A stretch of DNA of 64,000 nucleotides, taken from contig NC_086129.1 in NCBI RefSeq assembly GCF_963921235.1, forward strand, positions 20,460,001 to 20,524,000, given 5' to 3'. The first letter of the stretch is position 1; each line of letters begins with the position of its first letter. Positions 3,700-62,628 of this stretch are shown here, piece by piece. The position numbers and the translations under genes are program-made. Under the pieces are notes generated by a model. That model worked only from the letters and a program-made list of their open reading frames with translations. It did not search any database and had not been told where the DNA came from. The stretch is from Mobula hypostoma (Eukaryota).

Positions 3700-5480
3700 G
3701 GGACCTTAATCTATACACACACTGAGAAAATCAGGAGTTGGTGCGGATGACAAATTAATGAAACAGATTTTCAAAATCACAGGATCTAGTGACCTAGACC
3801 TTGACGTTCTGAATAAGGTGGCGATGGAGACAGGGGTTGCATTCATTGTCACCTTCCAGAATTCCAGACACTCAAGAACATTTCCCAGATCTTAGAAAGC
3901 TGTAATTAAAGTTGCACGATAAGGGGGAGAGTGAAACCAAAGAGCTATAGGCAAATTAGCCTGAAATCTGCTGAAGGAAAACACAAGAATCAGTTATTAA
4001 TAAAGTGCTAACAAGGCACTTAGAAAACATTAATAGAATGGGGCAGAGTGAACAGAAAGTTATGAAAGAGAAATCACTTTGAACATCTTTGTTAAAGATT
4101 TTTCAGCTTGTACGTAGCTAAATAGATATGGGTGAATGAATAGATAAAACTTCAGCGAACCTTTAATACTAACAAAATTACGCCACAGGAGATCAGAATA
4201 CTCCAGAGAAACAAAGACTGGTGAAAGGACATAGAAAATAGACTGTTGGATTAAACGCTACATTTTGGAGTTCAGAGGTAGGGTGCTGCAAAGATCTATC
4301 TAGGGCCTCAGCTGCTCACAATGTTTATCAATGATTAGTTAAAGAGGCCAAGTGTGATATCTCCAAGTTTGTTGATGGTGCAAGCCCAGATGGCAGTCAG
4401 TGAAGGAAGCAGGAGATATAAGTGAATTTCAGCAAACAGGAAAATATATGGTAAATATAATACATTGTGGTGAAAAGAAGCCCATCCACATTGTAGAGAA
4501 CATAGAAAGGTCAAGTATTATTTAAATAGTTTAAAGGCTGAACACTTTTCAGTGAGATCTAAGTGTCATTATATACAAGCAACACACATATAAAATGCTG
4601 GTGAACACAGCAGGCCAGGCAGCATCTCTAGGAAGAGGTACAGTTGACATTGCGGGCTGAGACCTTTCGTCAGGACTAACTGAACAAAGAGATAGTAACT
4701 ATCTCTTCTATCTCTTCCTCTTGCTATCTCTTCTTTCAGTTAGTCCTGACAAAGGGTCTTGGCCCGAAACGTCGACCGTACCTGTTCCTATAGATGCTGC
4801 CTGGCCTGCTGTGTTCACCAGCATTTTTTGTGTGTGTCGCTTGAATTTCCAACATCTGCAGATTTCCTCGTGTTTGTGTCATTGTACACAAATCACTTGA
4901 AATTAACATTCAGAGACAGCAAGCAATTAGGAAAACAAATGATATGTTGTTCTTCTCTGAAGAAGGATTTGTATGCAATTGTAAAGTATTTTGCTGCAAT
5001 TACATTGAGCCCTGGTGAGAATATGCCATTCAGGTCTACCTGAGGGTGGATGTACTTGCCCAAGAGAGCAAGCAACAAAGGCTCATCAGTTTGATTCCTT
5101 GAAGAAGAAGATTGTCCATGAGAAGAGACTAAACTATGTCCAAGAGGTTGGAAAATTGGGTACTATTCTCATTGAACTACAAATTCTGAAGAAGCTTGAC
5201 AGGGTAGATGTGAACTCAATTCTTCTCCTGGCTGGGAGGCTTAGAACTAGAGGTTAGATTTTGAAGGCAGGACATTAACTTCAGAATAGAAATTGGTGGA
5301 TCTATGGAATATTTTACCTAAAACGGCAGTGGAGAGTCAGTACTGAGAACATTTAAGAAAGGAACAGGTAGGTTTTTCAATATTCTGCGAATAAAATGTA
5401 ATGGGTTTAACGCAGGCAAGTGGTGCTGAAGGATAAGAATGGCCATGAGTGGAATGGCCTTCTAATTCAAATTTTTTATA
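3700..5480 (+). mobile_element. Old degraded CR1 LINE (RT region), interrupted by a PLE insertion
   Basis: Remnants such as atctccaagtttgttgatgg and LKKLDRVDV...GRLRTRG (ORF 5015-5257); CR1-like 3' end near 5440-5480. Confidence 0.65.
4579..4875. mobile_element. PLE terminus as an inverted pseudo-LTR pair (hairpin with arms of about 120 bp) containing hammerhead remnants
   Basis: 4579-4700 is the reverse complement of about 4725-4845; flanked by imperfect 16-bp TSD gtgtcatt(a/g)ta(t/c)acaa at 4563-4578 and 4876-4891; matches the terminus of the PLE at 37617. Confidence 0.85.
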
Positions 5481-19220: not shown

Positions 19221-20111
19221 ACGACACACATCAAAGTTGCTGGTGAACGCAGCAGGCCAGGCAGCATCTCTAGGAAGAGGTGCAGTCGACGTTTCGGGCC
19301 GAGACCCTTCGTCAGGACTGGATAAGTGCGGAGGGAGTGGAGAGCAGAACGTTCGGAAGGAGTAAGGTTGGAATGGGAACGAGGTGCAGTGAAGTCGAGA
19401 CGGTTGATGTCCCGTTGGCAGTTAGCAATAAAGAGATCCTGAGCAGACAGAAGACCAGAGCGGGGTGTCCATGAAGAGAAGGAGGGTTGAAGATGGGAGA
19501 AGGGGTCATCGGTGGGGGTGGAAGAATCCTTGCCAAAGAAGTAGGCTTGGAGACGGAGACGGCGGAAGGAGAGTTCCACGTCATGACGTACACGGAACTC
19601 ACTGAGGTATGGGCAAAGGAGGACAAAGGTGAGGCCCTTACTGAGGACAGAGCGTCCTGCCTCAGACAGTTGAAGGTCAGGGGGGATGGTAAAGACCCGG
19701 CACGGATGAGAGCTGGGATCAGAGGGGGGAGGGGGGAGGCTGGGGGTGTCAGTGGAGAGGGGAGGGTTGGAGTGAGAGGAAGATGGAGCCTCTGAGGGCC
19801 CAGGAGCTGACGGCGGGATCTGAGGGAGACGGGGTTGCAGAGTGGTGGTGGGGGAAGGGGAGACGGGAGTCACAACAGCAGCACATAAAGACCCGGCCTG
19901 GAGTTCAAGGCTGGAGTCGCAGTTGGTGGTTGCGCAATCGCTTTGAAGGTGTCCATGGTCGTTGCTGGAGTCCGGGTTTTGAATATACCCTGAGGTGTTG
20001 CAGCTGGCGAGATCAATGGCAGGGGCCGCAATCTGAAGTCCATGCCTGCTAGCGTCAGGGCCAGTAGGCTCTGGGGTCTGCAGATGTAAGATCTTGCGAT
20101 CTTTGCGATCT
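19221..20111 (-). mobile_element. Internally deleted PLE: N-terminal coding region fused directly to the hammerhead-bearing terminus
   Basis: ORF 19196-19873 is close to the N-terminus of ORF 38252-40294; TSD tcaagaga at 19213-19220 and 20112-20119. Confidence 0.9.
19283..19320 (-). ncRNA. Minimal type I hammerhead ribozyme (intact core)
   Basis: Minus strand reads CAGUC-CUGACGA-A-GGGUCUCGGCCC-GAAA-CG-UC-GACUG: stem I CAGUC/GACUG, conserved core, stem II, palindromic ACGU helix III and GUC cleavage triplet. Confidence 0.85.
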
Positions 20112-37616: not shown

Positions 37617-40374
37617 CAACATACATCAAAGTTGCTGGTGAACGCAGCAGGCCAAGCAGCATCTGTAGGAAGAGGTGCAGTCGACGTTTCAGGCCGAGAC
37701 CCTTCGTCAGGACTAACTGAAGGAAGAGTGAGTAAGGGATTTCAAAGCTGGAGGGGGAGGGGGAGATGCAAAATGATAGGAGAAGACAGGAGGGGCAGGG
37801 ATAGAGCCGAGAGCTGGACAGGTGATAGGCAAAAGGGGATACGAGAGGATCATGGGACAGGAGGTCCGGGAAGAAAGACTAGGGGGGCGGGGGTGACCCA
37901 GAGGATGGGCAAGAGGTATATTCAGAGGGACAGAGGAAGAAAAAGGAGAGTGAGAAAAAGAAAAAGGTTGGAGGCTACCCAGATGGAATATAAGGTGTTG
38001 TTCCTCCAACCTGAGTGTGGCTTCATCTTTACAGTAGAGGAGGCCGTGGATAGACATGTCAGAATGGGAATGGGATGTGGAATTAAAATGTGTGGCCACT
38101 GGGAGATCCTGTTTTCTCTGGCGGACAGAGCGTAGATGTTCAGCAAAGTGGTCTCCCAGTCTGCGTCGGGTCTCGTCAATATATAAAACGCCACATCGGG
38201 AGTACCGGACGCAGTATATCACCCCAGCCGACTCACAGGTGAAGTGATGCCTCACCTGGAAGGACTGTTTGGGGCCCTGAATGGTGGTAAGGGAGGAAGT
38301 GTAAGGGCATGTGTAGCACTTGTTCCGCTTACACGGATAAGTGCCAGGAGGGAGATCAGTGGGGAGGGATGGGGGGGACGAATGGACAAGGGAGTTGTGT
38401 AGGGAGCGATCCCTGCGCAATGCAGAGAGAGTGGGGGAGGGAAAGATGTGCTTAGTGGTGGGATCCCGTTGGAGGTGGCGGAAGTTACGGAGAATAATAT
38501 GTTGGACCCGGAGGCTGGTGGGGTGGTAGGTGAGGACCAGGGGAACCCTATTCCTAGTGGGGTGATGGGAGGATGGAGTGAGAGCAGATGTACGTGAAAT
38601 GGGGGAGATGCGTTTAAGAGCAGAGTTGATAGTGGAGGAAGGGAAGCCCCTTTCTTTAAAAAAGGAAGACATCTCCTCGTCCTGGAATGAAAAGCCTCAT
38701 CCTGAGAGCAGATGCGGTGGAGACGGAGGAATTGCGAGAAGGGGATGGTGTTTTTGCAAGAGACAGGGTGAGAAGAGGAATAGTCCAGATAGCTGTGAGA
38801 GTCAGTAGGCTTATAGTAGACATCAGTAGATAATCTGTCTCCAGAGATAGAGACAGAAAGATCTAGAAAGGGGAGGGAAGTGTCAGAAATGGACCAGGTA
38901 AACTTGAGGGCAGGGTGAAAGTTGGAGGCAAAGTTAATAAAGTCAACGAGTTCTGCATGCGTGCAGGAAGCAGCGCCAATGCAGTCGTCGATGTAGCGAA
39001 GGAAAAGTGGGGGACAGATACCAGAATAGGCACGGAACATAGATTGTTCCACAAAGCCAACAAAAAGGCAGGCATAGCTAGGACCCATACGGGTGCCCAT
39101 AGCTACACCTTTAGTTTGGAGGAAGTGGGAGGAGCCAAAGGAGAAATTATTAAGAGTAAGGACTAATTCTGCTAGACGGAGCAGAGTGGTGGTAGAGGGG
39201 AACTGATTAGGTCTGGAATCCAAAAAGAAGCGTAGAGCTTTGAGACCTTCCTGATGGGGGATGGAAGTATATAAGGACTGGACATCCATGGTGAAAATAA
39301 AGTGGTGGGGGCCAGGGAACTTAAAATCATCAAAAAGTTTAAGAGCGTGAGAAGTGTCACGAACATAGGTCGGAAGGGATCGAACAAGGGGTGATAAAAC
39401 AGTGTCGAGGTATGCAGAAATGAGTTCGGTGGGGCAGGAGCAAGCTGAGACAATAGGTCGGCTAGGACAGGCAGGTTTGTGGATCTTGGGTAGGAGGTAG
39501 AAACGGGACGTGCGGGGTGTGGGAACTATAAGGTTGGTAGCAGTGGATGGGAGATCCCCTGAGCGGATAAAGTCCGTGATGGTGTGGGAGACAATGGCCT
39601 GGTGCTCCTTAGTGGGGTCACGATCGAGGGGTAAATAAGAGGAGGTATCCGCGAGTTGTCGCTGTGCCTCGGCAAGGTAGAGGTCAGTACGCCAGACTAC
39701 AACAGCACCCCCCTTATCGGCGGGTTTAATAATAGGGTTAGGATTAGTGCGGAGGGAGTGGAGAGCAGAGCGTTCCGAAGGAGTGAGGTTGAAATGGGGA
39801 CAAGGTGCGGTGAAGTCGAGACGGGTGATGTCCCGTCGGCAGTTAGCGATAAAGAGATCCAGAGCAGGCAGAAGACCAGAGCGGGGTGTCCATGAAGAAG
39901 AGGAGGGTTGAAGACGGGAGAAGGGGTCATCGGTGGGGGTGGAAGAGTCTTTGCCGAAGAAGTAGGCTCGGAGACGGAGACGGCGGAAGAAAAGTTCCTC
40001 ATCGTGGCGAACACGGAACGCGCTGAGGTGTGGGCGAAGGGGGACAAACGTGAGGCCCTTACTGAGGACAGAGCGTTCTGCCTCTAACAGTTGAAGGTCG
40101 GAGGGGATGGTAAAGACCCGGCACGGATGAGAGCTGGGATCAGAGGGGGGAGGGGGGAGGCTGGTGGTGTCAGTGGAGAGGGGAGGGTTGGGGTGAGAGG
40201 AAGATGGAGCCTCTGAGGGCCCAGGAGTTGATGGTGGGATCTGAGGAAGACGGGGCTGCGGAGTGGTGGTGGGGGAAGGGGAGACGGGAGTCACAATAGC
40301 AGCACATAAAGACCCGGCCTGGAGTTCAAGGCTGGAGTCGCAGTTGGTGGTTGCGCAATCACTCCTAATGTGAA
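37617..40374 (-). mobile_element. Near-complete PLE (Neptune-like: RT, Cys linker, GIY-YIG), one frameshift near 38680
   Basis: ORF 38252-40294: KPADKGG, FYLLPKIHK, MDVQSLYT, GVAMG, RYIDD; ORF 37713-38672: CKRNKCYTC, VIYC...LYIDET...EH; 14-bp TSD ttagaagagatcag at 37603-37616 and 40375-40388. Confidence 0.95.
37678..37715 (-). ncRNA. Minimal type I hammerhead ribozyme in the PLE terminus
   Basis: UAGUC-CUGACGA-A-GGGUCUCGGCCU-GAAA-CG-UC-GACUG. Confidence 0.8.
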
Positions 40375-41249: not shown

Positions 41250-43002
41250 CTTCCATTTCATGCCTTGTGATCATTTATTTACAATAGGAGTAATGTACAA
41301 TATCTAGGTAACTTATCAGCACTTGCTTGGGATGTGGAGACAAAGCAGAGTGCCTGGAGGAAAGACAACGGATTACAGAGAAAACCCAGGGTCAGAATCA
41401 TTTCCACATGCCTGGAGCTGTGAGGTAGCAGCACTACCTGCTGCATAAGCCCACCGCCTGTACACGCACACGGCACAGCATCAACACATTCACCAACTAC
41501 TGCCCAGCATTTGACTGACCCCCTTTCGGCTGCAGCCCTCTGACAGTTGTGAAGGTAATTTGAACAGATCTCATTCATTCTGCTCACCAGCCCCTGCTTT
41601 CATCAGGGTAAGTTGCCCATTGCAGCTGCAGAGCACTGGAAGAAAGAAAAGACTCTTGCTCATGTTGTTTACTTGGCTTTCTGACCTGGCCGCCTCTCTC
41701 CAAAGAATTAAGCACAAAATGTGAACTGACACATTAACACAGCTGGAGCTGACACTTAACCACATTCAGATAGAATATTAACAACAGCCTCCCCACCATA
41801 AATCCACCCCTCAGCACTCCCACCCCTTTCCATTTTGGGTTGAGTTCAATGATATAATGTATGACTTAGGAAAGCAAAGGAAGATGAGAAGTGGATTCCT
41901 GGCTCAAAATCAACACCACAATTTCACCAGGAGACACTTATTGCTTGTCAGCCCTTGCTCCATCACTTCCGCCCTCTCCCACCTTTATATATTGGCTATC
42001 TCCTTTCTTTTTTTCCATGAAGGGTATCAACCCAAAGTGTCAGCAATCTATTTCCCTCCATAGTTGCTGCCTGACACACTAACCTCCTTCATTTGGGTGT
42101 TGCTCCAGATTTCCAGCATCTGCAGAGTCTTGTGTCTTCATCACAACAAAAATGTTTTACCGGGGTTTCTGGATCTTACATTATAATAATAATTACAAGT
42201 GCAACTCCATCAACTGGAATTGGCATTGATTTATTATTGTCATATATACCAAGATACAAAGAAAAACTTAATTATCATGCCATCCATTCAGATAATTTCA
42301 AACCAGAAGTACATTGAGGTAGTACAAGGGGAAAGTAAGATTGAAGAGATTAAAAAGTAGCTCTGCCAGCTGATCTGCACAGGATTGGCCAAGGACTCCA
42401 TCCAAGCCAGATACCTTCCTCCCTCAGTTTGCTTTCCAGAACGCTGATCTGATACCTACAATAGTGTCTGTGGGTACGAGTGCATTGAAGGATATTGGTG
42501 TCATTTCATTCATCTTCTGTTCAAAAGGTTCATAAGATGCAGTGAGCTTTAGTCTACCAGTTTAAATTATAGTATCTTTAATTAACTTTAAAAGCACCAT
42601 TGGATGCTGGTGGTGCTATTTAAAAGCAAGTCTTTCTTTGTTTTTATGGCTGAGAGCTTTAGGAATGCTCATGTGCACAAGAAGGGGAAATGTCAGCTTG
42701 GCATCTGCTCCTTGCATCCCACACTCACATCTGTTTCCTTATGAATCTTGGCAATAACTGGCTCTGTGTGTATTTCATCAATGTTACAATGCAGACACTC
42801 CACCGCATAGATAATACTTCGACCAATATATTGCCTCTATATTGGAAAGAAAACTTCATCTGCAAGCTTTCTGTTGAAATGCGTGGAGTAGGAAGAAAAA
42901 AAATCTAAAATAATTTACTCTTAATTCCAAATTGTTCCAGTTGCACAAAATTCTAAACATGTTTGTACTTTGGAATTCTGTTCTGTTGAAATAATCTCTC
43001 TT

Positions 43003-43165
43003 TGTCATGGTCCGGTCCATGAAGTCTGCATTCCGATTCACAGTCTGGTCCATGTTCCTTATTCCAGGTTTTCCAGTTTTCCCCAGTTTCTGTTGAGGCC
43101 GCTGATTCACGTTTGGGCTGGCTTCATAAATACCTTCAAGATTCAGCCCCTGGCTGTGGCTGTGG
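43003..43165 (+). mobile_element. 5' portion of an LTR of the same family as 56637-57626
   Basis: tgtcatggtccggtccatgaagtctgcattccg matches tgtcatggtctggtccgtgatgtccgcattccg; TATA-like cataaata at about 43124. Confidence 0.75.
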
Positions 43166-44345
43166 TTTTGGTTGGCTGAGCGTGGAGAGGTGAGCTGGGA
43201 GTGTGTGTTGGAAGCAATGGGTCGAGACGACTGACTGGAAAATGGCAGAGAGAGAGAACATCAAGGAAAGAGCCAAGCTGTTAAAGGAAGTTTTTGGCGA
43301 GAGTGGAAGTGAACTAGAGATGGAGGTTGGCGGGAAAGAGGAATGGAATGGAAAGAGGAAGAAAAGAAAGCAGAGGTACGGGATATCAAACTCTGAGGAG
43401 TCAGCGGATGATCAAAACAGGACAGCAAAACAATGGAAAGGAGATGAGGTTAAAGTAATTATAAAACTAAACGAGGACGGGGAGTCTTTTGGTGATTGGA
43501 ACCCGATTTGTTTGACGAAGATGCTCAACAAAATTATAGGCAAGATTAAAAGAGCAAAGATTTTATGAAATGGATCGCTATTAGTGATTTGTCGGGATAG
43601 TGCTCAGCAAGGCAAAGTGATAAGATTAAATAAAATAGACGGCATATAAGTACAATGCTCAATACTCAACAATAGAAAGTGGACTAAAGGAGTTATTTCG
43701 GGGATACCAACAAAAGTTACTATGGATGAGATTAAACAGAACAGAAAAGGAGCAAAAATTATTGAGGTCAAATGTTTGAAAGTCACAAGAAACAGGAAAA
43801 AGTGTGATAGTTTATCGGTAATGATTAACTTTGATGAAGAGAGATTGCTAACTAACGTTTACTTTGGGTATATGTGTTATGTGGTTAGAATGTATATACC
43901 ACCGCTCCTAAGATGCTATAAATGTCAGAAATTCGGGCACATTGCAGCGGTCTGCAGAGGAAAACAAAGATGTGGGAGATGCGCTGGAAAACATGAATAT
44001 GGGAAATGTGAAGCGGGAGTTAGGCTGAAATGCTGCAATTGTGGCAAGGAACACAGCGCAGCTAATTGAGGGTGCATTTATAGCAACAAGGCGGCTGAGA
44101 TACAATATGTAAAAGTAACTCAAGGAATCAGTTATGCAGAGGCAGTGAAAGAATTTGAAGAAAAAAAGGTTGTCAAGCAAACAAATACAGGGAATAATAA
44201 ACTGTTGAATTGTGAGAGATGTAATATGAAAAATAAGGATACACTGACAATGAGTAGAAAGGACTTCATACTTTTTAATGTGGATGCAATTAATTGTTCA
44301 GCGCAAACAAGCAAAAGAACTGAGAAAATTAATATTATCGTCAAG
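43166..44345 (+). mobile_element. I/Nimb/Jockey-group LINE 5' end and ORF1 (gag-like, three CCHC knuckles), disrupted and 3'-truncated
   Basis: KGVISGIP and YIPPLLRCYKCQKFGHIAAVC...CGRCAGKHEYGKC...CCNCGKEHSA (ORF 43722-44069); in-frame stops. Confidence 0.85.
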
Positions 44346-44782
44346 GAAAAGGAATTTGTTGCAAAGTGAATTACCTACATTCAGATTATAAAATGAAAAC
44401 ATGGAAGCAAATGAAGAAGAACTCCAAGGTCTCAGTAAACAACTGCAGGCTATGATCCAAGAAAAGGAAAACCTGAAAAAGCAGATAGACTTGGAAAAAC
44501 AAGAAGTTTAAAAGTATAACGTGCAATAATTACTATTCTTTAACAAGATGATTTTAGTCTTACAAGTGATGTAGATGAAATCAATGTAATTGAGGTAATG
44601 CAACTATACGAAAACATGTGACATAATTAGGGAAGAATAGCAGTTTGCGGCATTATCTAATAAGCGCAATCAATCTTCAAATATAAAGTTGCAATACAAA
44701 ATGGTGACGCTCAAATTTTAAGGTTACAATAAAATCAACGTTTATTCAGTCTGCAGCTGATACACTGAGGTGAACAGTGGAT

Positions 44783-45295
44783 TTACCCCAGCACAATGGT
44801 AGACCATCCACCAGGTGGGACTCTCTTGCGCCTTACTGGTTCAGTTTGAGCAGACTCTACTGGCCCAGGCACACACTCTCCTTTCTTTCCCTGGGCTTCC
44901 ATTTGGTTTTCAGTTTCGGAGGAACCTGAGCTATTTTCACCTTTCCCAGTTGCGATATCCGGAGTTTTGGGAGGTATTTCCACAATGTCAAAGATGCCAC
45001 TTGCCTTGCCACCAGGAGGATTTCTCCGTTGCTTTCGATCAGGTGTTTCAGTGGTAGCTGCTTCAAAGATACCACTACTTTTTCCACCTGGCGGGTTCCT
45101 TCTTCTAGCCACAGGTTGATTTTGCAATGGTGGCCCAAAGATATTGGATGCGGTTTTGCTTGGACGGGAATGCACTGGTTTGGCATTTTCCTCCAGCCCC
45201 AATGAGATACTGGATTCACCACCTGGAGGCTGCATCACCCTGGAACTGCTGCGATCCTTGGAGTCCAGGTCTTGGTTGGTGGTTGTCTTGCTCAT
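44783..45295 (-). CDS. JPT1: Jupiter microtubule-associated homolog (HN1/JPT family), intronless retrocopy 1, 170 aa
   Basis: MSKTTT..SSRVMQPPGGESSISLG, ASNIFG, two NPPGGKxSGIF repeats and C-terminal PPGGWSTIVLG; AATAAA at 44741-44746. Termini resemble JPT1 and internal repeats resemble JPT2, so the paralog assignment is uncertain. Confidence 0.85.
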   Translation of the reverse strand: MSKTTTNQDLDSKDRSSSRVMQPPGGESSISLGLEENAKPVHSRPSKTASNIFGPPLQNQPVARRRNPPGGKSSGIFEAATTETPDRKQRRNPPGGKASGIFDIVEIPPKTPDIATGKGENSSGSSETENQMEAQGKKGECVPGPVESAQTEPVRRKRVPPGGWSTIVLG

Positions 45296-45502
45296 GTCTT
45301 CCGATCCGCAGATGAGATACCAAACTATTGATAGGTATAATAACCACCAGGTTATTACGTACATTTAGGCTGCTATTGATACAATACCCAAAGGAGTCCT
45401 GTAGAGGTTACATCTGATGATGCTATGCCATTGTTACACTTCATGATGTCAGCAAACATCACAATGAACTCAAGACCTGCTTAAGGTGTGTGATTAAAAT
45501 TA

Positions 45503-45940
45503 GTAGCCTCCAACCTGATGGCATGAACATTGACTTCTCTAACTTCCGCTAGGCCCCACCTCCCCCTCGTACCCCATCTGTTACTCTTTTTTATGCACAC
45601 ATTCTTTCTCACACTCTCCTTTTTCTCCCTCTGTCCCTCTGAATATACCTCTTGCCCATCCTCTGGGTCACCCCCCCCCGTCTTTCTTCCCGGACCTCCT
45701 GTCCCATGATCCTCTCGTATCCCCTTTTGCCAATCACCTGTCCAGCTCTCGGCTCTATCCCTCCCCCTCCTGTCTTCTCCTATCATTTTGCATCTCCCCC
45801 TCCCCCTCCAGCTTTCAAATCCCTTACTCACTCTTCCTTCAGTTAGTCCTGACAAAGGGTCTCGGCCTGAAACGTCGACTGTACCTCTTCCTATAGATGC
45901 TGCCTGGCCTGCTGCGTTCACCAGCAACTTTGATGTGTGT
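45503..45940 (+). mobile_element. PLE 3' fragment (438 bp) inserted in array unit 1 only
   Basis: 12-bp TSD tgattaaaatta at 45491-45502 and 45941-45952; empty sites in units 2 and 3; hammerhead at 45844-45881 carries a CUGACAA core mutation. Confidence 0.93.
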
Positions 45941-46694
45941 TGATTAAAATTATCGTCCGGTCTGCAGAAAAGTATCTTGGTATTAAAGGAATTAGGTGGA
46001 AAGAAGTCAAAGAAACGCTGAATGGAGAATCCAACAGTTCACAGGCAGGGGAGATAGAATCTTAATGGCAACATATTTATCGCAAATGGTCAAGAATTTA
46101 AGAAATGTTTCAGAACTTAAGGAAAATCCTCAGATTATATGGTTGAAGCCCAGGGTAAATGTACAGAACTCCAAAAACAAATAGCTGCACCCGACAAGAA
46201 CAACTGTGAGTTGGAAAAGAGATTGGAAAACGGAGGAAATTATTACAAGGATACAAAAAGAAAAGGAATTTGTTGCAAAGTGAACTATCTACATTCAGAT
46301 TATAAAATGAAAACATGGAAGCAAATGAAGAAGAACTCCGAGGTCTCAGTAAACAACTGCAGGCTATGATCCAAGAAAAGGAAAACCTGAAAAAGCAGAT
46401 AGACTTGGAAAAACAAGAAGTTTAAACGTATAACTTGTGATAATTACTATTCTTTAACAAGATGATTTTAGTCTTACAAGTGATGTAGATGAAATCAATG
46501 TAATTGAGGTAATGCAACTACACGAAAACGTGACATAATTAGGGAAGAATAGCAGTTTGCGGTATTATCTAATGAGCGCAATCAGCCTTCAAATGTAAAG
46601 TTGCAATACAAAATGGTGACGCTCAAATTTTAAGGTTACAATAAAATCAATGTTTATTCAGTCTGCAGCTGATACACTGAGGTGAACAGTGGAT

Positions 46695-47207
46695 TTACCC
46701 CAGCACAATGGTAGACCATCCACCAGGTGGGACTCTCTTGCGCCTTACTGGTTCAGTTTGAGCAGACTCTACTGGCCCGGGCACACACTCTCCTTTCTTT
46801 CCCTGGGCTTCCATTTGGTTTTCAGTTTCGGAGGAACCTGGGCTATTTTCACCTTCCCCAGTTGCGATATCCGGAGTTTTGGGAGGTATTTCCACAATGT
46901 CAAAGATGCCACTTGCCTTGCCACCAGGAGGATTTCTCCGTTGCTTTAGATCAGGTGTTTCAGTGGTAGCTGCCTGAAAGATACCACTACTTTTTCCACC
47001 TGGCGGGTTCCTTCTTCTAGCCACAGGTTGATTTTGCAATGGTGGCCCAAAGATATTGGATGCAGTTTTGCTTGGACGGGAATGCACTGGTTTGGCATTT
47101 TCCTCCAGCCCCAATGAGATACTGGATTCACCACCTGGAGGCTGCATCACCCTGGAACTGCTGCGATCCTTGGAGTCCAGGTCTTGGTTGGTGGTTGTCT
47201 TGCTCAT
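46695..47207 (-). CDS. JPT1: Jupiter/HN1-family intronless retrocopy 2, 170 aa
   Basis: Intact ORF with the same motifs as copy 1 and 4 aa differences; downstream AATAAA conserved. Confidence 0.85.
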   Translation of the reverse strand: MSKTTTNQDLDSKDRSSSRVMQPPGGESSISLGLEENAKPVHSRPSKTASNIFGPPLQNQPVARRRNPPGGKSSGIFQAATTETPDLKQRRNPPGGKASGIFDIVEIPPKTPDIATGEGENSPGSSETENQMEAQGKKGECVPGPVESAQTEPVRRKRVPPGGWSTIVLG

Positions 47208-48158
47208 GTCTTCCGATCCGCAGATGAGATACCAAACTATTGATAGGTATAATAACTACCAGGTTATTACGTACATTTAAGCTGCTATTGATACAATACC
47301 CAAAGGAGTCCTGTAGAGGTTACATCTGATGATGCTATGCCATTGTTACACTTCATGATGTCAGCAAACATCACAATGAACTCAAGACCTGCTTAAGGTG
47401 TGTGATTAAAATTATCGTCAAGTCTGCAGAAAAGTATCTTGGTATTAAAGGAATTAGGTGGAAAGAAGTCAAAGAAACGCTGAATGGAGAATCCAGCAGT
47501 TCACAGGCAGGGGAGATGGAATCTTAATGGCAACATATTTATCGCAAATGGTCAAGAATGAAAGAAATATGTTTCAGAACTTAAGGAAAATCCTCAGATT
47601 TTATGGTTGAAGCCCAGGGTAAATGTGCAGAACTCCAAAAACAAATAGATACACCCGACAAGAACAACTGTGAGTTGGAAAAGAGATTGGAGAATGGAGG
47701 AAATTATTACAAGGATACAAAAAGAAAAGGAATTTGTTGCAAAGTGAACTATCTACATTCAGATCATAAAATGAAAACATGGAAGCAAATGAAGAAGAAC
47801 TCCGAGGTCTCAGTAAACAACTGCAGGCTATGATCCAAGAAAAGGAAAACCTGAAAAAGCAGATAGACTTGGAAAAACAAGAAGTTTAAAAGTATAACGT
47901 GCAATAATTACTATTCTTTAACAAGATGATTTTAGTCTTACAAGTGATGTAGATGAAATCAATGTAATTGAGGTAATGCAACTACACGAAAACGTGACAT
48001 AATTAGGGAAGAATAGCAGTTTGCGGCATTATCTAATGAGAGCAATCAGCCTTCAAATGTAAAGTGCCAATACAAAATGGTGACGCTCAAATTTTAAGGT
48101 TACAATAAAATCAATGTTTATTCAGTCTGCAGCTGATACACTGAGGTGAACAGTGGAT

Positions 48159-48671
48159 TTACCCCAGCACAATGGTAGACCATCCACCAGGTGGGACTCT
48201 CTTGCGCCTTACTGGTTCAGGTTGAGCAGACTCTACTGGCCCAGGCACACACTCTCCTCTCTTTCCCTGGGCTTCCATTTGGTTTTCAGTTTCGGAGGAA
48301 CCTGGGCTATTTTCACCTTCCCCAGTTGCGATATCCGGAGTTTTGGGAGGTATTTCCACAATGTCACAGATGCCACTTGTCTTGCCAGCAGGAGGATTTC
48401 TCCGTTGCTTTCGTTCAGGTGTTTCAGTGGTAGCTGCCTGAAAGATACCACTACTTTTTCCACCTGGCGGGTTCCTTCTTCTAGTCACAGGTTGATTTTG
48501 CAATGGTGGCCCGAAGGTATTGGATGCAGTTTTGCTTGGACGGGAATGCACTGGTTTGGCATTTTCCTCCAGCCCCAATGAGATACTGGATTCACCACCT
48601 GGAGGCTGCATCACCCTGGAACTGCTGCGATCCTTGGAGTCCAGGCCTTGGAAGGTTGTTGTGCTGCTCAT
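48159..48671 (-). CDS. JPT1: Jupiter/HN1-family intronless retrocopy 3, 170 aa
   Basis: Intact ORF starting MSSTTTFQGLDS, closest to the canonical HN1 start MTTTTTFKG; downstream AATAAA conserved. Confidence 0.85.
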   Translation of the reverse strand: MSSTTTFQGLDSKDRSSSRVMQPPGGESSISLGLEENAKPVHSRPSKTASNTFGPPLQNQPVTRRRNPPGGKSSGIFQAATTETPERKQRRNPPAGKTSGICDIVEIPPKTPDIATGEGENSPGSSETENQMEAQGKRGECVPGPVESAQPEPVRRKRVPPGGWSTIVLG

Positions 48672-49699
48672 GTCTTCCGATCCGCAGATGAGATACCAAA
48701 CTATTGATAGGTATAATAACCACCAGGTTATTACGTACATTTAGGCTGCTATTGATACAATACCCAAAGGAGTCCTGTAGAGGTTACATCTGATGATGCT
48801 ATGCCATTGTTACACTTCATGATGTCAGCAAACATCACAATGAACTCAAGACCTGCTTAAGGTGTGTGATTAAAATTATCGTCAAGTCTGCAGAAAAGTA
48901 TCTTGGTATTAAAGGAATTAGGTGGAAGGAAGTCAAAGAAACGCTGAATGGAGAATCCAACCGTTCACAGGCAGGGGAGATGGAATCTTAATGGCAACAT
49001 ATTTATCGCAAATGGTCAAGAATTTAAGAAATGTTTCAGAACTTAAGGAAAATCCTCAGATTTTATGGTTGAAGCCCAGGGTAAATGTGCAGAACTCCAA
49101 AAACAAATAGATGCACCCGACAAGAACAACTGTGAGTTGGAAAAGAGATTGGAGAATGGAGGAAATTATTACAAGGATACAAAAAGAAAAGGAATTTGTT
49201 GCAAAGTGAACTATCTACATTCAGATTATAAAATGAAAACATGGAAGCAAATGAAGAAGAACTCCGAGGTCTCAGTAAACAACTGCAGGCTATGATCCAA
49301 AAAAAGGAAAACCTGAAAAAGCAGATAGAGTTAGAAAATCAGCAATCTTAAAAGTATAATGTACAATAACTACTATTCTTTCTTTCTTTTTCAATCTTTT
49401 TATTAATTCCATAGAATGAAAACATAACAAAGCAAAATTACAAGTAGTAAGAGATACATTGTTACATTTAAGATGAGTAATTGTAAAACCAAATAGTGAA
49501 AATTAACAAAGCTCCCAATCGTGCAGAATAATAGTGAATAATACAAAGCAAAAAAAAACTGAAGAAAAATTTATTATTTATTATTTATGGTGCAACTGTA
49601 ATGAAAACCAATTCTCCCGGGATCAATAAAGTATGACTATGACTGTGACTATGACTATTACCTCAATTACATTGATTTCATCTACATCACTTGTAAGAC

Positions 49700-50550
49700 T
49701 AAAATCGTCCTGTCTCTCCCTCGACCAAGGCTCTGCGTTCCTGTCTCTCCCTCAACCAAGACAAGGCTTCGGGGTCTCGTCCAGTCCTAGCGATGATCCA
49801 AGAACCCCATCCTGTCCAAGCCATGGCTTTGTGTTCTTGTCTTGTCCATGTGTCTCGCCCAGCCCAGGAGTACCTTGCCCAGCCCAGTGCTGAGGTTCCC
49901 TTGTCCTGTCCAGGAGTTTCACATCCAGTCCTGTTGCCTCTCCTCATCCTGTAGGCACGTCTTGTCGTCACTTAGTTCTGGAGTCCATGCCCGAGTCAAG
50001 TCCTAGGTTTTGGGTCTTTGCCCAGTCTCTGGCTCGGAGTCCATACCCAAGCCTCGAAGTACCCTCGCCTTGAGGATCCCGAGCCCCAACATGCCCTCGC
50101 CTCAGGGAACCCCAGCCCCATCATACCCTCGACTCGAGGATCCTGAGCCCCGTCATGCCCTCGCCTCAGGGAACCCGAGCCCCGTCATGCCCTCGCCTCA
50201 AGGAACCTGAGCCCCGAAATGCCCTCGCCTCGAGGAATCTGAGCCCCGAAATGCCCTCGCCTGGATCCAGGGTCTGAGCCCAAGTCAAGACCCAGGTTTT
50301 GGGTCCTTGTCCAGTCTCTGGCTCGGGGTCCTAGCCCAGGCTCCTAGTTCCAAGTTCCATGTCCCCATTCCACTATCCTAGACAAGTCCTAGCCCAGGCC
50401 CTGTATCCTTGTCTCATCCAGGGCCTGTGTCATGTCCAGCGTCCTTTCTTCCCCTCTCCCCTTGCTTCCTTGTCACGCCTAGTCCTGTTCCTAGTACTTC
50501 AGTGTCTGTGTCTTGCATTTGGGTCCGCTCCCAGTGCCCCCCATGTTACA
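49700..50550 (+). mobile_element. 3' portion of an LTR of the same family as 56637-57626
   Basis: End cttcagtgtctgtgtcttgcatttgggtc...tgttaca matches 57575-57626. Confidence 0.78.
50062..50261. repeat. 32-bp GC-rich minisatellite, about 6 copies, inside the LTR
   Basis: ccctcgcc recurs every 32 nt from 50062 to 50254. Confidence 0.92.
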
Positions 50551-51002
50551 CTTTCTGCTTTAATCACAAACAATCATTGCGCTCCTCAGAGTCAGTTTGC
50601 CTCTGTAGGGAGAAAACTTATACTGAACCCAGCCAATAAGTGTTTGCTTTACATGTTTCGGAGTAGATCCTCTCAATCATTGTGCATTTCCTGTAGGTCA
50701 CAGCCATTCCTGCAAGCCCCTATCCCTTTTTGTCTCTTTTCCTCAAGAAGTCTATTTTCTATCCATTATTATTTAACAAAAGTTGCCATTTGCTTAACCT
50801 TCTTATAAGCTCAGGAGTGATTGCATTATCCCTCTGCAGCTCTGAATTGCGATAGGTGAGTACAGAGAGGGTATTTGAGTTATCAACGCAAGTCTTCGCT
50901 AGCTGCGACGCACTTAAAGCTCCACCAACAGCAATCTGTGCCTTTTTGAAACTCAGATTCTCAACAAGCCTAACTGTTGGAAACAAGACAGCTTTGGGTC
51001 AC

Positions 51003-52019: not shown

Positions 52020-52425
52020 ATCCCCACCTCCTCTTTGTACCCCATCCCTTATTAATTATTTTTTTTCTTTCCCTTTTTTTCTCTTTTTTTTCTCCCTCTG
52101 TCCCTCTCACTATAACTCCTTGCCCATCCTCTGGGTTCCCCCCCCTTTCTTTCTCCCTAGGCCTCCCGTCCCATGCTCCTCTCCCTTCTCCAGCCTCGTA
52201 TCCCTTTTGCCAATCACCTGTCCAGCTCTTAGCTCCATCCCTCTCCCTCCTGCCTTCTCCTATCATTTCGGACCTCCCCTCCACCTCCCACTTTCAAATC
52301 TCTTACTATCGCTTCCTTCAGTTAGTCCTGACGAAGGGTCTCGGCCTGAAACATTGACTGTGCTTCTTCCTATATATGTTGCCTGGCCTGCTGCGTTCAC
52401 CAGCATTTTGTCTGTGCGTTGTTTG
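52020..52425 (+). mobile_element. PLE 3' terminus with a decayed hammerhead (52323-52360)
   Basis: Similar to 45560-45940. Confidence 0.8.
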
Positions 52426-62527: not shown

Positions 62528-62628
62528 AAGCAAAACACATAAAAAATGCTGGTGAACGCAGCAGGCCAGGTAACATCTATAGGAAGAGGTACAGTCAACG
62601 TTTCGGGTCGAGACCCTTCGTCAGGACT
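62528..62628 (-). mobile_element. 101-bp PLE-terminus mini-insertion with an intact hammerhead (62593-62628)
   Basis: 13-bp TSD ctaaaagcaatgg at 62515-62527 and 62629-62641; AGUC-CUGACGA-A-GGGU-CUCG-ACCC-GAAA-CG-UU-GACU. Confidence 0.9.

What the first reader, a model, noticed from the sequence alone, without database searches (positions are those of the whole stretch)
44343..49381. Tandemly amplified array of three intact intronless Jupiter-family (JPT1/JPT2) retrogenes
Seen in sequence: in 64 kb where nearly every TE ORF is broken, three 513-nt ORFs are all intact. Each has the same ATG context (GGAAGACATG) and an AATAAA about 40 nt after the stop, inside a 1.46-kb tandem unit. Established: vertebrate JPT1 (HN1) and JPT2 (HN1L, an NAADP-binding partner of two-pore channels) are multi-exon genes built from PPGG repeats. 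Inference: a retrocopy was amplified into a young lineage-specific gene family, possibly germline-expressed. The protein combines JPT1-like termini (TTTFQG, SISLG, IVLG) with JPT2-like internal NPPGGKxSGIF repeats and has an unusual W in the last repeat (PPGGWS).
Basis: partly seen in the sequence, partly recalled or inferred. Interest (0 to 1): 0.8.

Follow-up and report, generated by a model that had tools for sequence, protein, structure and literature searches.

The report
Amplified JPT1 retrocopy array in devil ray
A devil-ray chromosome carries three tandem, intron-less, still-readable copies of the small microtubule-protein gene JPT1; they belong to a ray-specific family of at least nine such copies that changes its protein very fast, and it is not yet shown that any copy is used.

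Summary
Three intact 170-aa ORFs lie on the minus strand in about 3.45 tandem units of 1,464 bp (window 44343-49381). One unit carries a later 432-bp repeat insertion.

The genome is Mobula hypostoma. The ORFs are 5'-truncated processed copies of the multi-exon JPT1b gene, which spans 78 kb on another chromosome. All four parental introns are precisely absent, and 113 nt of parental 3'UTR, including the AATAAA, came along. There is no poly(A) tail and no target-site duplication.

They belong to a mobulid-specific family. M. hypostoma has at least 9 distinct copies, all on this chromosome, and the manta assembly has at least 3. RefSeq already annotates them as "JPT1-like/JPT2-like". This scan met the same family before, 3.3 Mb further along the chromosome.

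The protein has evolved at about the neutral rate:
- There are 29-33 differences from a parent that has not changed.
- Between window copies, dN/dS is about 1.
- Core PPGG motifs are eroding in some copies.

Even so, no copy has a stop or an indel (neutral chance about 0.002-0.08), and the 197 nt upstream are unusually conserved.

RNA support is almost nil, but the public RNA probably comes only from females, with no testis.

Verdict: a real retrocopy family, with coding function plausible (about 0.6) but unproven. The "JPT1/JPT2 mix" is inherited from the parent.

The parts
44343..49381 (-). Whole tandem array: a partial unit, then unit 1 (1,912 bp with its insertion), unit 2 (1,464 bp) and a partial unit 3, about 3.45 units in all
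   Evidence: Self-BLAST and repeat finder give 96-99% identity between units.
44783..45295 (-). Retrocopy 1 CDS (170 aa plus stop), 4 PPGG motifs
   Evidence: The exact protein is already in NCBI/UniRef.
46695..47207 (-). Retrocopy 2 CDS (170 aa plus stop), 4 PPGG motifs
   Evidence: The four parental exon junctions (after nt 56, 208, 336 and 376) are seamless.
48159..48671 (-). Retrocopy 3 CDS (170 aa plus stop). It has the ancestral-like N-terminus SSTTTFQGL. One PPGG is degraded to PPAG and SGIF to SGIC.
46582..46694 (-). 113 nt of parental 3'UTR carried by the retrocopy (same block at 44670-44782 and 48046-48158). It contains AATAAA 36 nt after the stop. Homology to the parent stops abruptly, with no A-run.
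   Evidence: 91.5% identity to the sawfish 3'UTR, higher than the CDS at 85%.
47208..47404 (-). 197-nt AT-rich block upstream of the ATG (same block at 45296-45492 and 48672-48868). Only about the last 3-10 nt are parental. It is the least variable part of the unit. It holds an acceptor-like site (47243-47228) and an in-frame upstream ATG that adds a hydrophobic 23-aa extension in copies 1 and 3.
   Evidence: 2/197 variable sites against 58/1137 in the rest of the unit, p=0.008. No homology to the GC-rich sawfish promoter or 5'UTR. for the acceptor and extension.
47405..48045 (+). Degenerate fragment of an abundant repeat (coiled-coil ORF remnants on the + strand), followed by about 110 nt of unknown origin. 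It is co-amplified with the retrocopy. The same piece lies at 45943-46581, 48869-49381 and 44343-44669.
   Evidence: RNA-run contigs of the repeat family cover it and diverge exactly at 47404/47405..
45503..45934 (.). 432-bp insertion of a dispersed short repeat into unit 1, after the amplification, with a 17-18-bp target-site duplication (TAATTTTAATCACACAC)
   Evidence: Other family members lie at 37625-37962, 52022-52405, 62539-62628 and elsewhere.
43203..44342 (+). Left flank: the same repeat element, with a CCHC zinc-knuckle ORF at 43722-44069, running into the first partial unit. It is a likely substrate for the unequal recombination that built the array.
   Evidence: The junction sequence ...GAACTGAGAAAATTAATATTATCGTCAAG matches the loose ends of the repeat-family contigs.

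Best explanation
Shown. A spliced mRNA of the Mobula JPT1b gene was reverse-transcribed and inserted on another chromosome, next to or into a LINE-like repeat. The parent is a 5-coding-exon gene lying next to an MRPS7-like gene. The copy is 5'-truncated to within about 10 nt of the ATG. It carries the whole 513-nt CDS and 113 nt of 3'UTR. The insertion happened in the mobulid lineage after its split from stingrays. A 1.46-kb unit (197-nt upstream block, retrocopy, about 110 nt of unknown origin, and a repeat fragment) was then multiplied. This window holds three copies and the same chromosome holds at least six more. Patchwork sharing of variants suggests exchange between copies.

Inferred. 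The tandem multiplication most likely happened by unequal crossing-over between flanking repeat copies. The copies still encode a JPT-like, intrinsically disordered, basic protein. Selection appears to keep the reading frame and the upstream block, while the protein sequence changes at or above the neutral rate. Fixed novelties include RRKR and W next to the last PPGG. This pattern is typical of young gene families with narrow, often male-germline, expression. The promoter is not parental. It would be the conserved 197-nt block, or an upstream exon spliced to the acceptor 34 nt before the ATG, as in one manta gene model.
For: Retrocopy origin: the sawfish orthologue has 5 GT-AG exons over 54 kb, and every junction is seamless in the window. 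The Mobula parent P0044 spans 78.4 kb on a 61.0-Mb chromosome, whereas the copies sit on the 49.6-Mb one. Other family members are 513-nt single-exon genes.

Lineage: the family is a 100/100 clade sister to the Mobula parent inside Myliobatiformes. Its stem is 0.15-0.2 substitutions per site against a parent branch of 0.

Frame kept: 29-33 amino-acid differences from the parent, 19 of them fixed, yet all 12 known proteins keep the 170 residues of the family with no indel. One manta copy has lost its ATG and is modelled as 205 aa. A neutral simulation gives a probability of 0.02-0.08 for the stem and 0.002-0.016 for a full lineage.

Upstream block: 2/197 variable sites against 58/1137 elsewhere, p=0.008. 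Its last 30 nt are also readable in the manta model P0040.

Presence in other species: DNA of a second and a third organism holds 0.47 and 0.22-0.27 of the CDS words.

An earlier scan report on three other copies found an excess of amino-acid changes.
Against: Nothing shows purifying selection on the protein. Among the window copies dN/dS is 0.41 (only 7 changes), 1.27 and 1.48. CDS variability (4.3%) equals that of the repeat fragment (5.9%) and the 3'UTR (5.3%). Changes hit columns invariant in 11 cartilaginous-fish parents as often as variable ones (p=0.22 and 0.56). They include the defining motifs: PPGG to PPAG or PPDG, and SGIF to SGIC. P0002 keeps only 2 of 4 PPGG motifs.

Transcripts: in four RNA runs the CDS is blank except for one 170-nt contig of depth 3. 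No RNA run holds more than 0.09 of the CDS words.

The copy has no parental promoter. The count of intact copies comes partly from a protein database that lists only intact genes. The low variability of the upstream block was noticed after the fact and could reflect gene conversion.
Confidence: 0.6

Rival explanations
1. Dead passengers. The retrocopy was never functional. It lies in a 1.46-kb unit that was amplified by unequal recombination of repeat-rich DNA, and its short ORFs are still open only by luck, gene conversion between copies, and reporting bias.
For: Omega is about 1 between copies, and the CDS diverges like its flanks. Family-defining PPGG and SGIF residues are being lost. There is no parental promoter and almost no RNA. 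ORFs of 513 nt survive 45 random substitutions without a stop in 15% of simulations.
Against: Zero indels and zero stops occur along a stem of about 28 substitutions plus the later branches. The joint neutral probability is 0.002-0.08. All six copies seen in unselected genomic windows are intact, three here and three in the earlier report. The upstream block is conserved. The family is retained in two species said to be about 20 My apart.
Confidence: 0.3
2. Non-coding use. The array is transcribed as a long or small-RNA precursor (piRNA or siRNA cluster, or part of a host transcript), and the ORF is irrelevant. It might regulate the parent JPT1b or the surrounding repeat.
For: The retrocopies lie antisense to repeat fragments in a tandem array, a layout seen in small-RNA clusters (established knowledge, not tested here). 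One manta model joins an exon 91 kb upstream to a copy. The non-coding upstream block is the best conserved piece.
Against: No RNA covers the CDS or the upstream block in the runs laid. Rfam finds nothing in 42500-51000. About 15% nucleotide divergence from a parent-type CDS (measured against sawfish) is poor for small-RNA targeting. This reading does not explain the preserved frame.
Confidence: 0.07
3. Assembly artefact. The three copies are one or two real copies multiplied by mis-assembly of long noisy reads.
For: The M. hypostoma assembly is based on Nanopore reads.
Against: Copies differ at 22 CDS sites and about 36 flank sites, with a coherent pattern. Unit 1 has a private 432-bp insertion with a target-site duplication. 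All three proteins are distinct, and further distinct paralogues exist in this and an independently assembled species.
Confidence: 0.03

Closest known systems
JPT1/HN1 of cartilaginous fishes (RefSeq 'jupiter microtubule associated homolog 1b'; Mobula parent P0044)
   Same: Same length (170 aa) with collinear alignment and no indel. The four PPGG-type motifs are present in copies 1 and 2. Identity is 81-83% to the Mobula parent and 75-78% to the sawfish protein. The 3'UTR block with AATAAA is shared.
   Different: The copies have no introns, no parental CpG/CCAAT promoter, and lie on another chromosome in many copies. The family protein rate is at least 30 times the parent's (stem 0.15-0.2 against 0). 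Fixed novelties include V164W, an RRKR cluster, T13K/G14D and F32L.
JPT2/HN1L, the NAADP-binding partner of two-pore channels (function from my own knowledge, not tested here)
   Same: The internal NPPGGKxSGIF repeats resemble JPT2. The parent's best bony-vertebrate hits over 60-64% of its length are JPT2.
   Different: Cartilaginous fishes have their own JPT2 (P0155, P0133, P0131 and others), which forms a separate 99/99 clade. The parent and the retrocopies are outside it. The RefSeq label 'JPT2-like' on these copies is naming noise. For example, P0017 ('JPT1') and P0018 ('HN1-like') are products of one gene.
Amplified retrogene families with germline expression, e.g. primate CDY (retrocopy of CDYL amplified on the Y chromosome; from my own knowledge)
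   Same: An intron-less copy of a multi-exon housekeeping-type gene, later amplified into a multi-copy lineage-specific family, with fast protein evolution.
   Different: Here expression, tissue and sex-linkage are all unknown. The unit is only 1.46 kb and includes a repeat fragment.
Single JPT1b retrocopy of the Atlantic stingray (P0054, Hypanus sabinus)
   Same: A single-exon (459-nt) copy of the same parent gene on another chromosome.
   Different: It arose independently. It derives from the exon-skipped 152-aa isoform, is a single copy inside an LRR gene, and is at least 90% identical to its parent's isoform (it falls in the same 90% cluster).

Membership tests
Jupiter/JPT family (Pfam PF17054) | Significant match to the family profile | tested here: inconclusive
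   The copies score 17-19 bits, E about 1e-3, below the 27-bit gathering cut-off. However, phmmer gives E=2e-70 to the sawfish protein, which does carry PF17054, with full-length collinear alignment.
Jupiter/JPT family (Pfam PF17054) | Small (about 150-200 aa) hydrophilic protein with repeated PPGG-type motifs | tested here: met
   170 aa, GRAVY about -0.95, pI 9.2-9.6. There are 4 PPGG motifs in copies 1 and 2 and 3 in copy 3. Paralogue P0002 keeps only 2.
JPT1 rather than JPT2 | Groups with the JPT1 orthologue, outside the JPT2 clade, and the parent shows JPT1 synteny | tested here: met
   The tree puts the copies with the Mobula parent. A separate 99/99 JPT2 clade contains cartilaginous-fish JPT2. 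The parent lies next to a Ribosomal_S7 (MRPS7-like) gene. That human JPT1 and MRPS7 are neighbours on 17q25 is from my own memory.
Processed retrocopy | Precise absence of all parental introns | tested here: met
   Four GT-AG introns lie after CDS nt 56, 208, 336 and 376 in sawfish. The window sequence is contiguous across all four. The Mobula parent spans 78.4 kb.
Processed retrocopy | Location away from the parent | tested here: met
   The parent is on a 61.0-Mb chromosome and the copies are on the 49.6-Mb chromosome.
Processed retrocopy | Poly(A) tail remnant at the 3' end | tested here: not met
   Parental homology ends 113 nt after the stop, with no A-rich run. The tail was either eroded or lost when the unit was formed.
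Processed retrocopy | Target-site duplications flanking the insert | tested here: inconclusive
   None is recognisable. The original borders are obscured by the tandem duplication. The only clear target-site duplication belongs to the later 432-bp insertion.
Functional retrogene | Transcription | tested here: inconclusive
   One depth-3 contig at 46604-46773 in one run, and no RNA run holding more than 0.09 of the CDS words. The public RNA of both species is from females, with no testis. The tool also warns that blank depth proves nothing.
Functional retrogene | Selective constraint on the coding sequence (dN/dS below 1) | tested here: not met
   Between copies dN/dS is 0.41, 1.27 and 1.48, and the CDS is as variable as its flanks. 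The 0.41-0.45 measured against sawfish mixes in the constrained parent lineage. A branch-specific test needs the Mobula parent CDS, which the tools would not deliver.
Functional retrogene | Open reading frame kept longer than chance allows | tested here: met
   The neutral probability is 0.002-0.08, depending on path length and indel rate. Database ascertainment is a caveat.

The most novel reading that the evidence does not exclude
The family could be a germline-restricted, conflict-driven or adaptively evolving ampliconic gene family, possibly on one of the X1/X2 sex chromosomes of Mobula. On this reading a JPT1 retrocopy acquired a new promoter (the conserved 197-nt block) and new protein properties: an RRKR basic cluster (a candidate nuclear-localisation or cleavage signal), a tryptophan beside the last PPGG, and an optional hydrophobic N-terminal extension. 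It would then be kept in many copies by selection for dosage or by an arms race, a cartilaginous-fish analogue of mammalian sex-linked ampliconic testis genes.
Probability: 0.12. Interest if true: 0.65.

Novelty: new member of a known kind. Interest (0 to 1): 0.36.

Why it matters
Retrocopy-derived gene families are a main route to new genes but are hardly described in sharks and rays. This family shows that devil rays made, amplified and kept a JPT1 copy on one chromosome (at least 9 distinct copies in one species, at least 3 in the manta assembly). The parent protein stayed identical between the two species while the copies changed about 18% of their residues.

It is also a practical warning. 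RefSeq labels the copies 'JPT1-like' or 'JPT2-like' as if they were ordinary paralogues. The retrocopy pipeline of the Vertebrate Genomes Project paper requires copies of one parent to lie at least 500 kb apart and removes retrocopies that originate from gene families with more than 5 paralogues (PMC13320880). Tandem arrays like this one may therefore be under-counted. If testis data show expression, the family becomes a tractable case of new-gene birth from an intrinsically disordered protein. If not, it is an instructive case of short ORFs outliving function.

Tried and rejected
1. Branch-specific dN/dS against the true parent was not possible. The look-up of encoding contigs gave gene spans but no DNA for M. 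hypostoma, the manta, Hypanus or Hemitrygon ('file too large'). Only sawfish DNA (L001) was delivered, so the stem omega is bounded rather than measured. From the 3'UTR block and the amino-acid counts I estimate it at about 0.8 or more.

2. The JPT1/JPT2 chimera idea is rejected, because the parent has the same make-up.

3. I looked for a poly(A) tail and target-site duplications of the retrocopy and found none.

4. I compared the 197-nt upstream block with the sawfish promoter and 5'UTR and found no homology. It is not repeated elsewhere in the window.

The pieces gave only a weak CCHC zinc knuckle in the left flank, so the repeat stays unclassified beyond 'LINE-like, gag-type ORF'.

6. Rfam on 42500-51000 gave nothing.

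7. RNA reads: the only read-laying run showed cover on the repeat fragment and not on the CDS. A CDS-only word search confirmed that RNA runs barely hold it.

8. Sex-linkage could not be decided. Two preprints give no chromosome sizes, and one has no supplements held.

9. A test for constraint by site class (invariant against variable parental columns) showed no signal. Multi-hit codons (5-6) match the random expectation of about 5 (my arithmetic).

10. Literature searches for JPT1 or HN1 retrogenes found nothing.

11. Structure prediction was not attempted, because the protein is low-complexity and presumably disordered.


Full report
**What is in the sequence**

The ORF listing finds three minus-strand ORFs of 170 codons plus stop, at 44783-45295, 46695-47207 and 48159-48671. 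Their products are 98% and 92% identical to the first copy.

The repeat finder and a self-BLAST show one tandem array from 44343 to 49381, about 3.45 units of 1,464 bp at 96-99% identity. Start-to-start spacing is 1912, 1464 and 1462. The long unit contains a 432-bp insertion (45503-45934) flanked by a duplicated TAATTTTAATCACACAC. That insertion belongs to a short dispersed repeat with other copies in the window. It entered after the amplification and shows that the units are separate loci.

No other JPT-like sequence is in the window.

**Whose genome, and is it already annotated?**

The three proteins are, letter for letter, in NCBI/UniRef. They cluster with RefSeq proteins of Mobula hypostoma named 'jupiter microtubule associated homolog 1-like' or '2-like', all on one 49,647,550-bp chromosome of GCA_963921235.1.

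- M. hypostoma has at least nine distinct family proteins: the three here plus P0001, P0037, P0039, P0042, P0002 and P0043.
- The manta assembly labelled M. birostris has at least three (P0038, P0040, P0041). A 2026 preprint calls that individual M. yarae.
- DNA runs of a second and a third organism hold 0.47 and 0.22-0.27 of the CDS words.
- This scan had already met the family 3.3 Mb further along the same chromosome (s1-142123 and s1-143035).

**Retrocopy origin**

The nearest non-family relatives are the single 'JPT1b'-type genes of other cartilaginous fishes.

For the sawfish Pristis pectinata I obtained the locus (L001). I rebuilt its CDS exactly from five GT-AG exons spread over 54 kb, with junctions after CDS nt 56, 208, 336 and 376. 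In the window the homologous sequence runs straight through all four junctions.

The true parent in the same genome is P0044. It is identical in both mobulids. It is a 170-aa protein whose gene spans 78.4 kb on a different, 61.0-Mb chromosome, next to a Ribosomal_S7 (MRPS7-like) gene. Two other family members are likewise 513-nt single-exon genes.

Homology to the parent type starts only about 3-10 nt before the ATG and continues for 113 nt after the stop, at 91.5% identity. The AATAAA 36 nt after the stop is in the same place in sawfish. It is therefore inherited, and parental homology continues about 70 nt beyond the end of that hexamer. After that, homology stops abruptly with no A-run. No target-site duplication is recognisable.

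Upstream, the sawfish gene has a GC-rich promoter with CCAAT boxes, whereas the ray copies have an unrelated AT-rich 197-nt block. The element is thus a 5'-truncated processed copy that lost the parental promoter. The precise loss of four introns is the proof; the classic end marks are missing.

**Anatomy of the unit and how the array arose**

Read on the minus strand, a unit has four parts:
1. The 197-nt upstream block.
2. About 636 nt of cDNA-derived sequence.
3. About 110 nt of unknown origin. A 57-nt piece of it recurs inverted at 49657-49713.
4. About 535 nt of a degenerate repeat lying in the opposite orientation.

Contigs from RNA libraries cover that repeat at depths of 20-300 and diverge from the window exactly at 47404/47405. 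This fixes the repeat border. The sequence they continue with is found at the left edge of the array, where a fuller copy of the same element runs into the first partial unit. That copy has a CCHC zinc-knuckle ORF at 43722-44069.

Copies of one repeat on both sides of the retrocopy are the obvious substrate for unequal crossing-over, which I take to be the amplification mechanism. This is inference.

Variants are shared in patches. Copy 3 has the ancestral-type N-terminus but shares the PPAG/SGIC patch with P0001, P0037 and P0002. The K/R polymorphism at residue 138 occurs in all four combinations with the N-terminal types. This suggests exchange between copies, as the earlier report also concluded.

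**Age and rate**

In maximum-likelihood trees the family is a 100/100 clade, sister to the Mobula parent (support 85/76 and 93/80), inside a 100/99 stingray-plus-Mobula group. The family stem is 0.15-0.2 substitutions per site and the parent branch is 0.

The copies share parent-specific Mobula states, such as ENQMEAQGKRGECVP. The retroposition therefore happened after the split from stingrays but before the two mobulids separated. The preprint puts that separation at about 20 My, citing Poortvliet et al. 2015.

The copies differ from the parent at 29-33 of 170 residues. The parent differs from stingray and sawfish at only 9 and 12. Nineteen differences are fixed in all 12 family proteins. They include V164W (PPGGW), an RRKR cluster made by two changes, T13K/G14D, G27E, F32L and S66R.

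**Is the protein under selection?**

*Signs against constraint*
- Between window copies, dN/dS is 0.41 (3 synonymous, 4 non-synonymous), 1.27 (4/16) and 1.48 (3/14).
- Over the three units, 22/513 CDS sites vary. This compares with 30/511 in the repeat fragment and 6/113 in the 3'UTR block.
- Fixed and polymorphic replacements hit columns that are invariant in 11 cartilaginous-fish parents as often as variable columns (p=0.22 and 0.56).
- Some copies have damaged the motifs that define the family: PPAG, PPDG and SGIC. P0002 keeps two of four PPGG motifs.
- The 0.41-0.45 obtained against sawfish includes the constrained parent lineage and is not informative for the copies.

*A rough bound on the stem*
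About 32 non-synonymous changes fall on the family lineage, giving dN of about 0.085. The total divergence of the co-copied 3'UTR block from sawfish is at most about 0.10. This puts omega on the family lineage at about 0.8 or more. It is my arithmetic, not a fitted model.

*Signs for constraint*
- There is not one stop or indel in any of the 12 proteins.
- A simulation with transition bias gives a probability of 0.30 of keeping the frame open while 19 residues change, and 0.15 for 30 residues.
- With 0.05-0.10 indels per substitution (the range seen in the units' own non-coding parts), the joint probabilities are 0.02-0.08 and 0.002-0.016.
- The 197-nt upstream block is the least variable part of the unit: 2/197 sites against 58/1137 elsewhere, p=0.008. 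It is identical between the two copies that differ most elsewhere.

*Caveats*
The database lists only intact genes. The upstream partition was chosen after seeing the data. Gene conversion can mimic conservation.

**Expression**

Contigs of four RNA runs laid on one unit leave the CDS and the upstream block blank. The one exception is a 170-nt contig of depth 3 in run X2, covering 46604-46773: the CDS end, the stop, the AATAAA and 48 nt beyond the hexamer. It has 3 mismatches, so it comes from a paralogue.

A CDS-only word search found DNA runs holding 0.8 of the words, but no RNA run above 0.09.

[quoted passage not shown] The manta RNA came from six organs of a female. No testis was sequenced. 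If the coded runs are those libraries, which is likely but not verifiable, the family is at most very weakly expressed in female tissues, and male germline expression is untested.

One manta model (P0040, 205 aa, spanning 91 kb) joins an upstream exon to an acceptor-like site 34 nt before a copy whose ATG has mutated. I cannot tell whether RNA supports it.

**Comparison with known families**

The copies are members of the Jupiter/JPT family by full-length similarity (E=2e-70 to a PF17054 protein). They themselves fall below the Pfam threshold, at 17-19 against 27 bits.

They are not JPT2. Cartilaginous fishes have a separate JPT2 that groups with bony-vertebrate JPT2 at 99/99, and the parent and its copies lie outside that clade. 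It is not a novelty of the copies. RefSeq's alternating '1-like' and '2-like' names are noise.

The nearest analogues by mechanism are amplified retrogene families such as primate CDY (my own knowledge).

I found no paper on JPT/HN1 retrocopies, and the mobulid genome preprint does not mention them. The Vertebrate Genomes Project survey of retrocopies required copies of one parent to be at least 500 kb apart. It also removed retrocopies that originate from gene families with more than five paralogues. Arrays like this one may therefore be under-counted by that pipeline.

**Verdict**

The structural claim is solid (about 0.95): a tandem array of JPT1b retrocopies belonging to a mobulid-specific family. 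Whether they are genes in use is open.

| Reading | Probability |
|---|---|
| Frame-preserving selection on a fast-evolving, narrowly expressed protein | 0.6 |
| Unused copies not yet broken | 0.3 |
| Non-coding use or assembly artefact | 0.1 |

This is a new member of a known kind of event. It is of moderate interest, and is already present in annotation and in an earlier report of this scan.

Noticed in passing
Hypanus sabinus protein P0054 (no DNA delivered): The Atlantic stingray has an independent single-exon (459-nt) copy of the exon-skipped 152-aa JPT1b isoform. It sits on another chromosome, nested within the span of an LRR gene. JPT1b has therefore been retrocopied more than once in rays.
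   Followed up: partly
window 45503-45934; also 37625-37962, 52022-52405, 62539-62628, 19230-19319, 4596-4823: A short dispersed repeat family. The copy in unit 1 has a 17-18-bp target-site duplication. Its last 90 nt match, at 90-96%, the roughly 100-bp 'hammerhead mini-elements' that another first-stage note places at 62528-62628. Rfam found no ribozyme in 42500-51000.
   Followed up: partly
window 46582-46694 against L001:57390-57502: The first 113 nt of the JPT1b 3'UTR, including AATAAA, are 91.5% identical between the ray retrocopies and the sawfish gene. That is more conserved than the coding sequence (85%), which suggests a conserved 3'UTR element in the parent gene.
   Followed up: no
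window 45296-45364 and 48672-48740 (minus strand): An in-frame upstream ATG in weak context would add a very hydrophobic 23-aa extension (MYVITWWLLYLSIVWYLICGSED, GRAVY +1.1) in copies 1 and 3. Copy 2 has a stop there. It resembles a signal or anchor sequence, but it may be accidental.
   Followed up: partly
window 49657-49713: A 57-nt piece of the unit (unit positions 1228-1284, of unknown origin) recurs inverted 276 nt beyond the right end of the array, at 96% identity.
   Followed up: no
window 50050-50262: A GC-rich tandem repeat of 32 nt, with higher orders of 64 and 96 nt, about 6 copies at 80-86% match, just right of the array.
   Followed up: no
window 48153-48581 (+ strand) and 46689-46949, 46727-46969: Long antisense ORFs (up to 142 aa) overlap the retrocopy CDS. 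They differ in length between units and look like by-products of the composition of the sense strand.
   Followed up: no
window 47405-47960: Contigs from RNA libraries of two species cover the repeat fragment of the unit at depths of 20-300. This LINE-like family is therefore abundant in those libraries, either as transcripts or as carried-over DNA.
   Followed up: no
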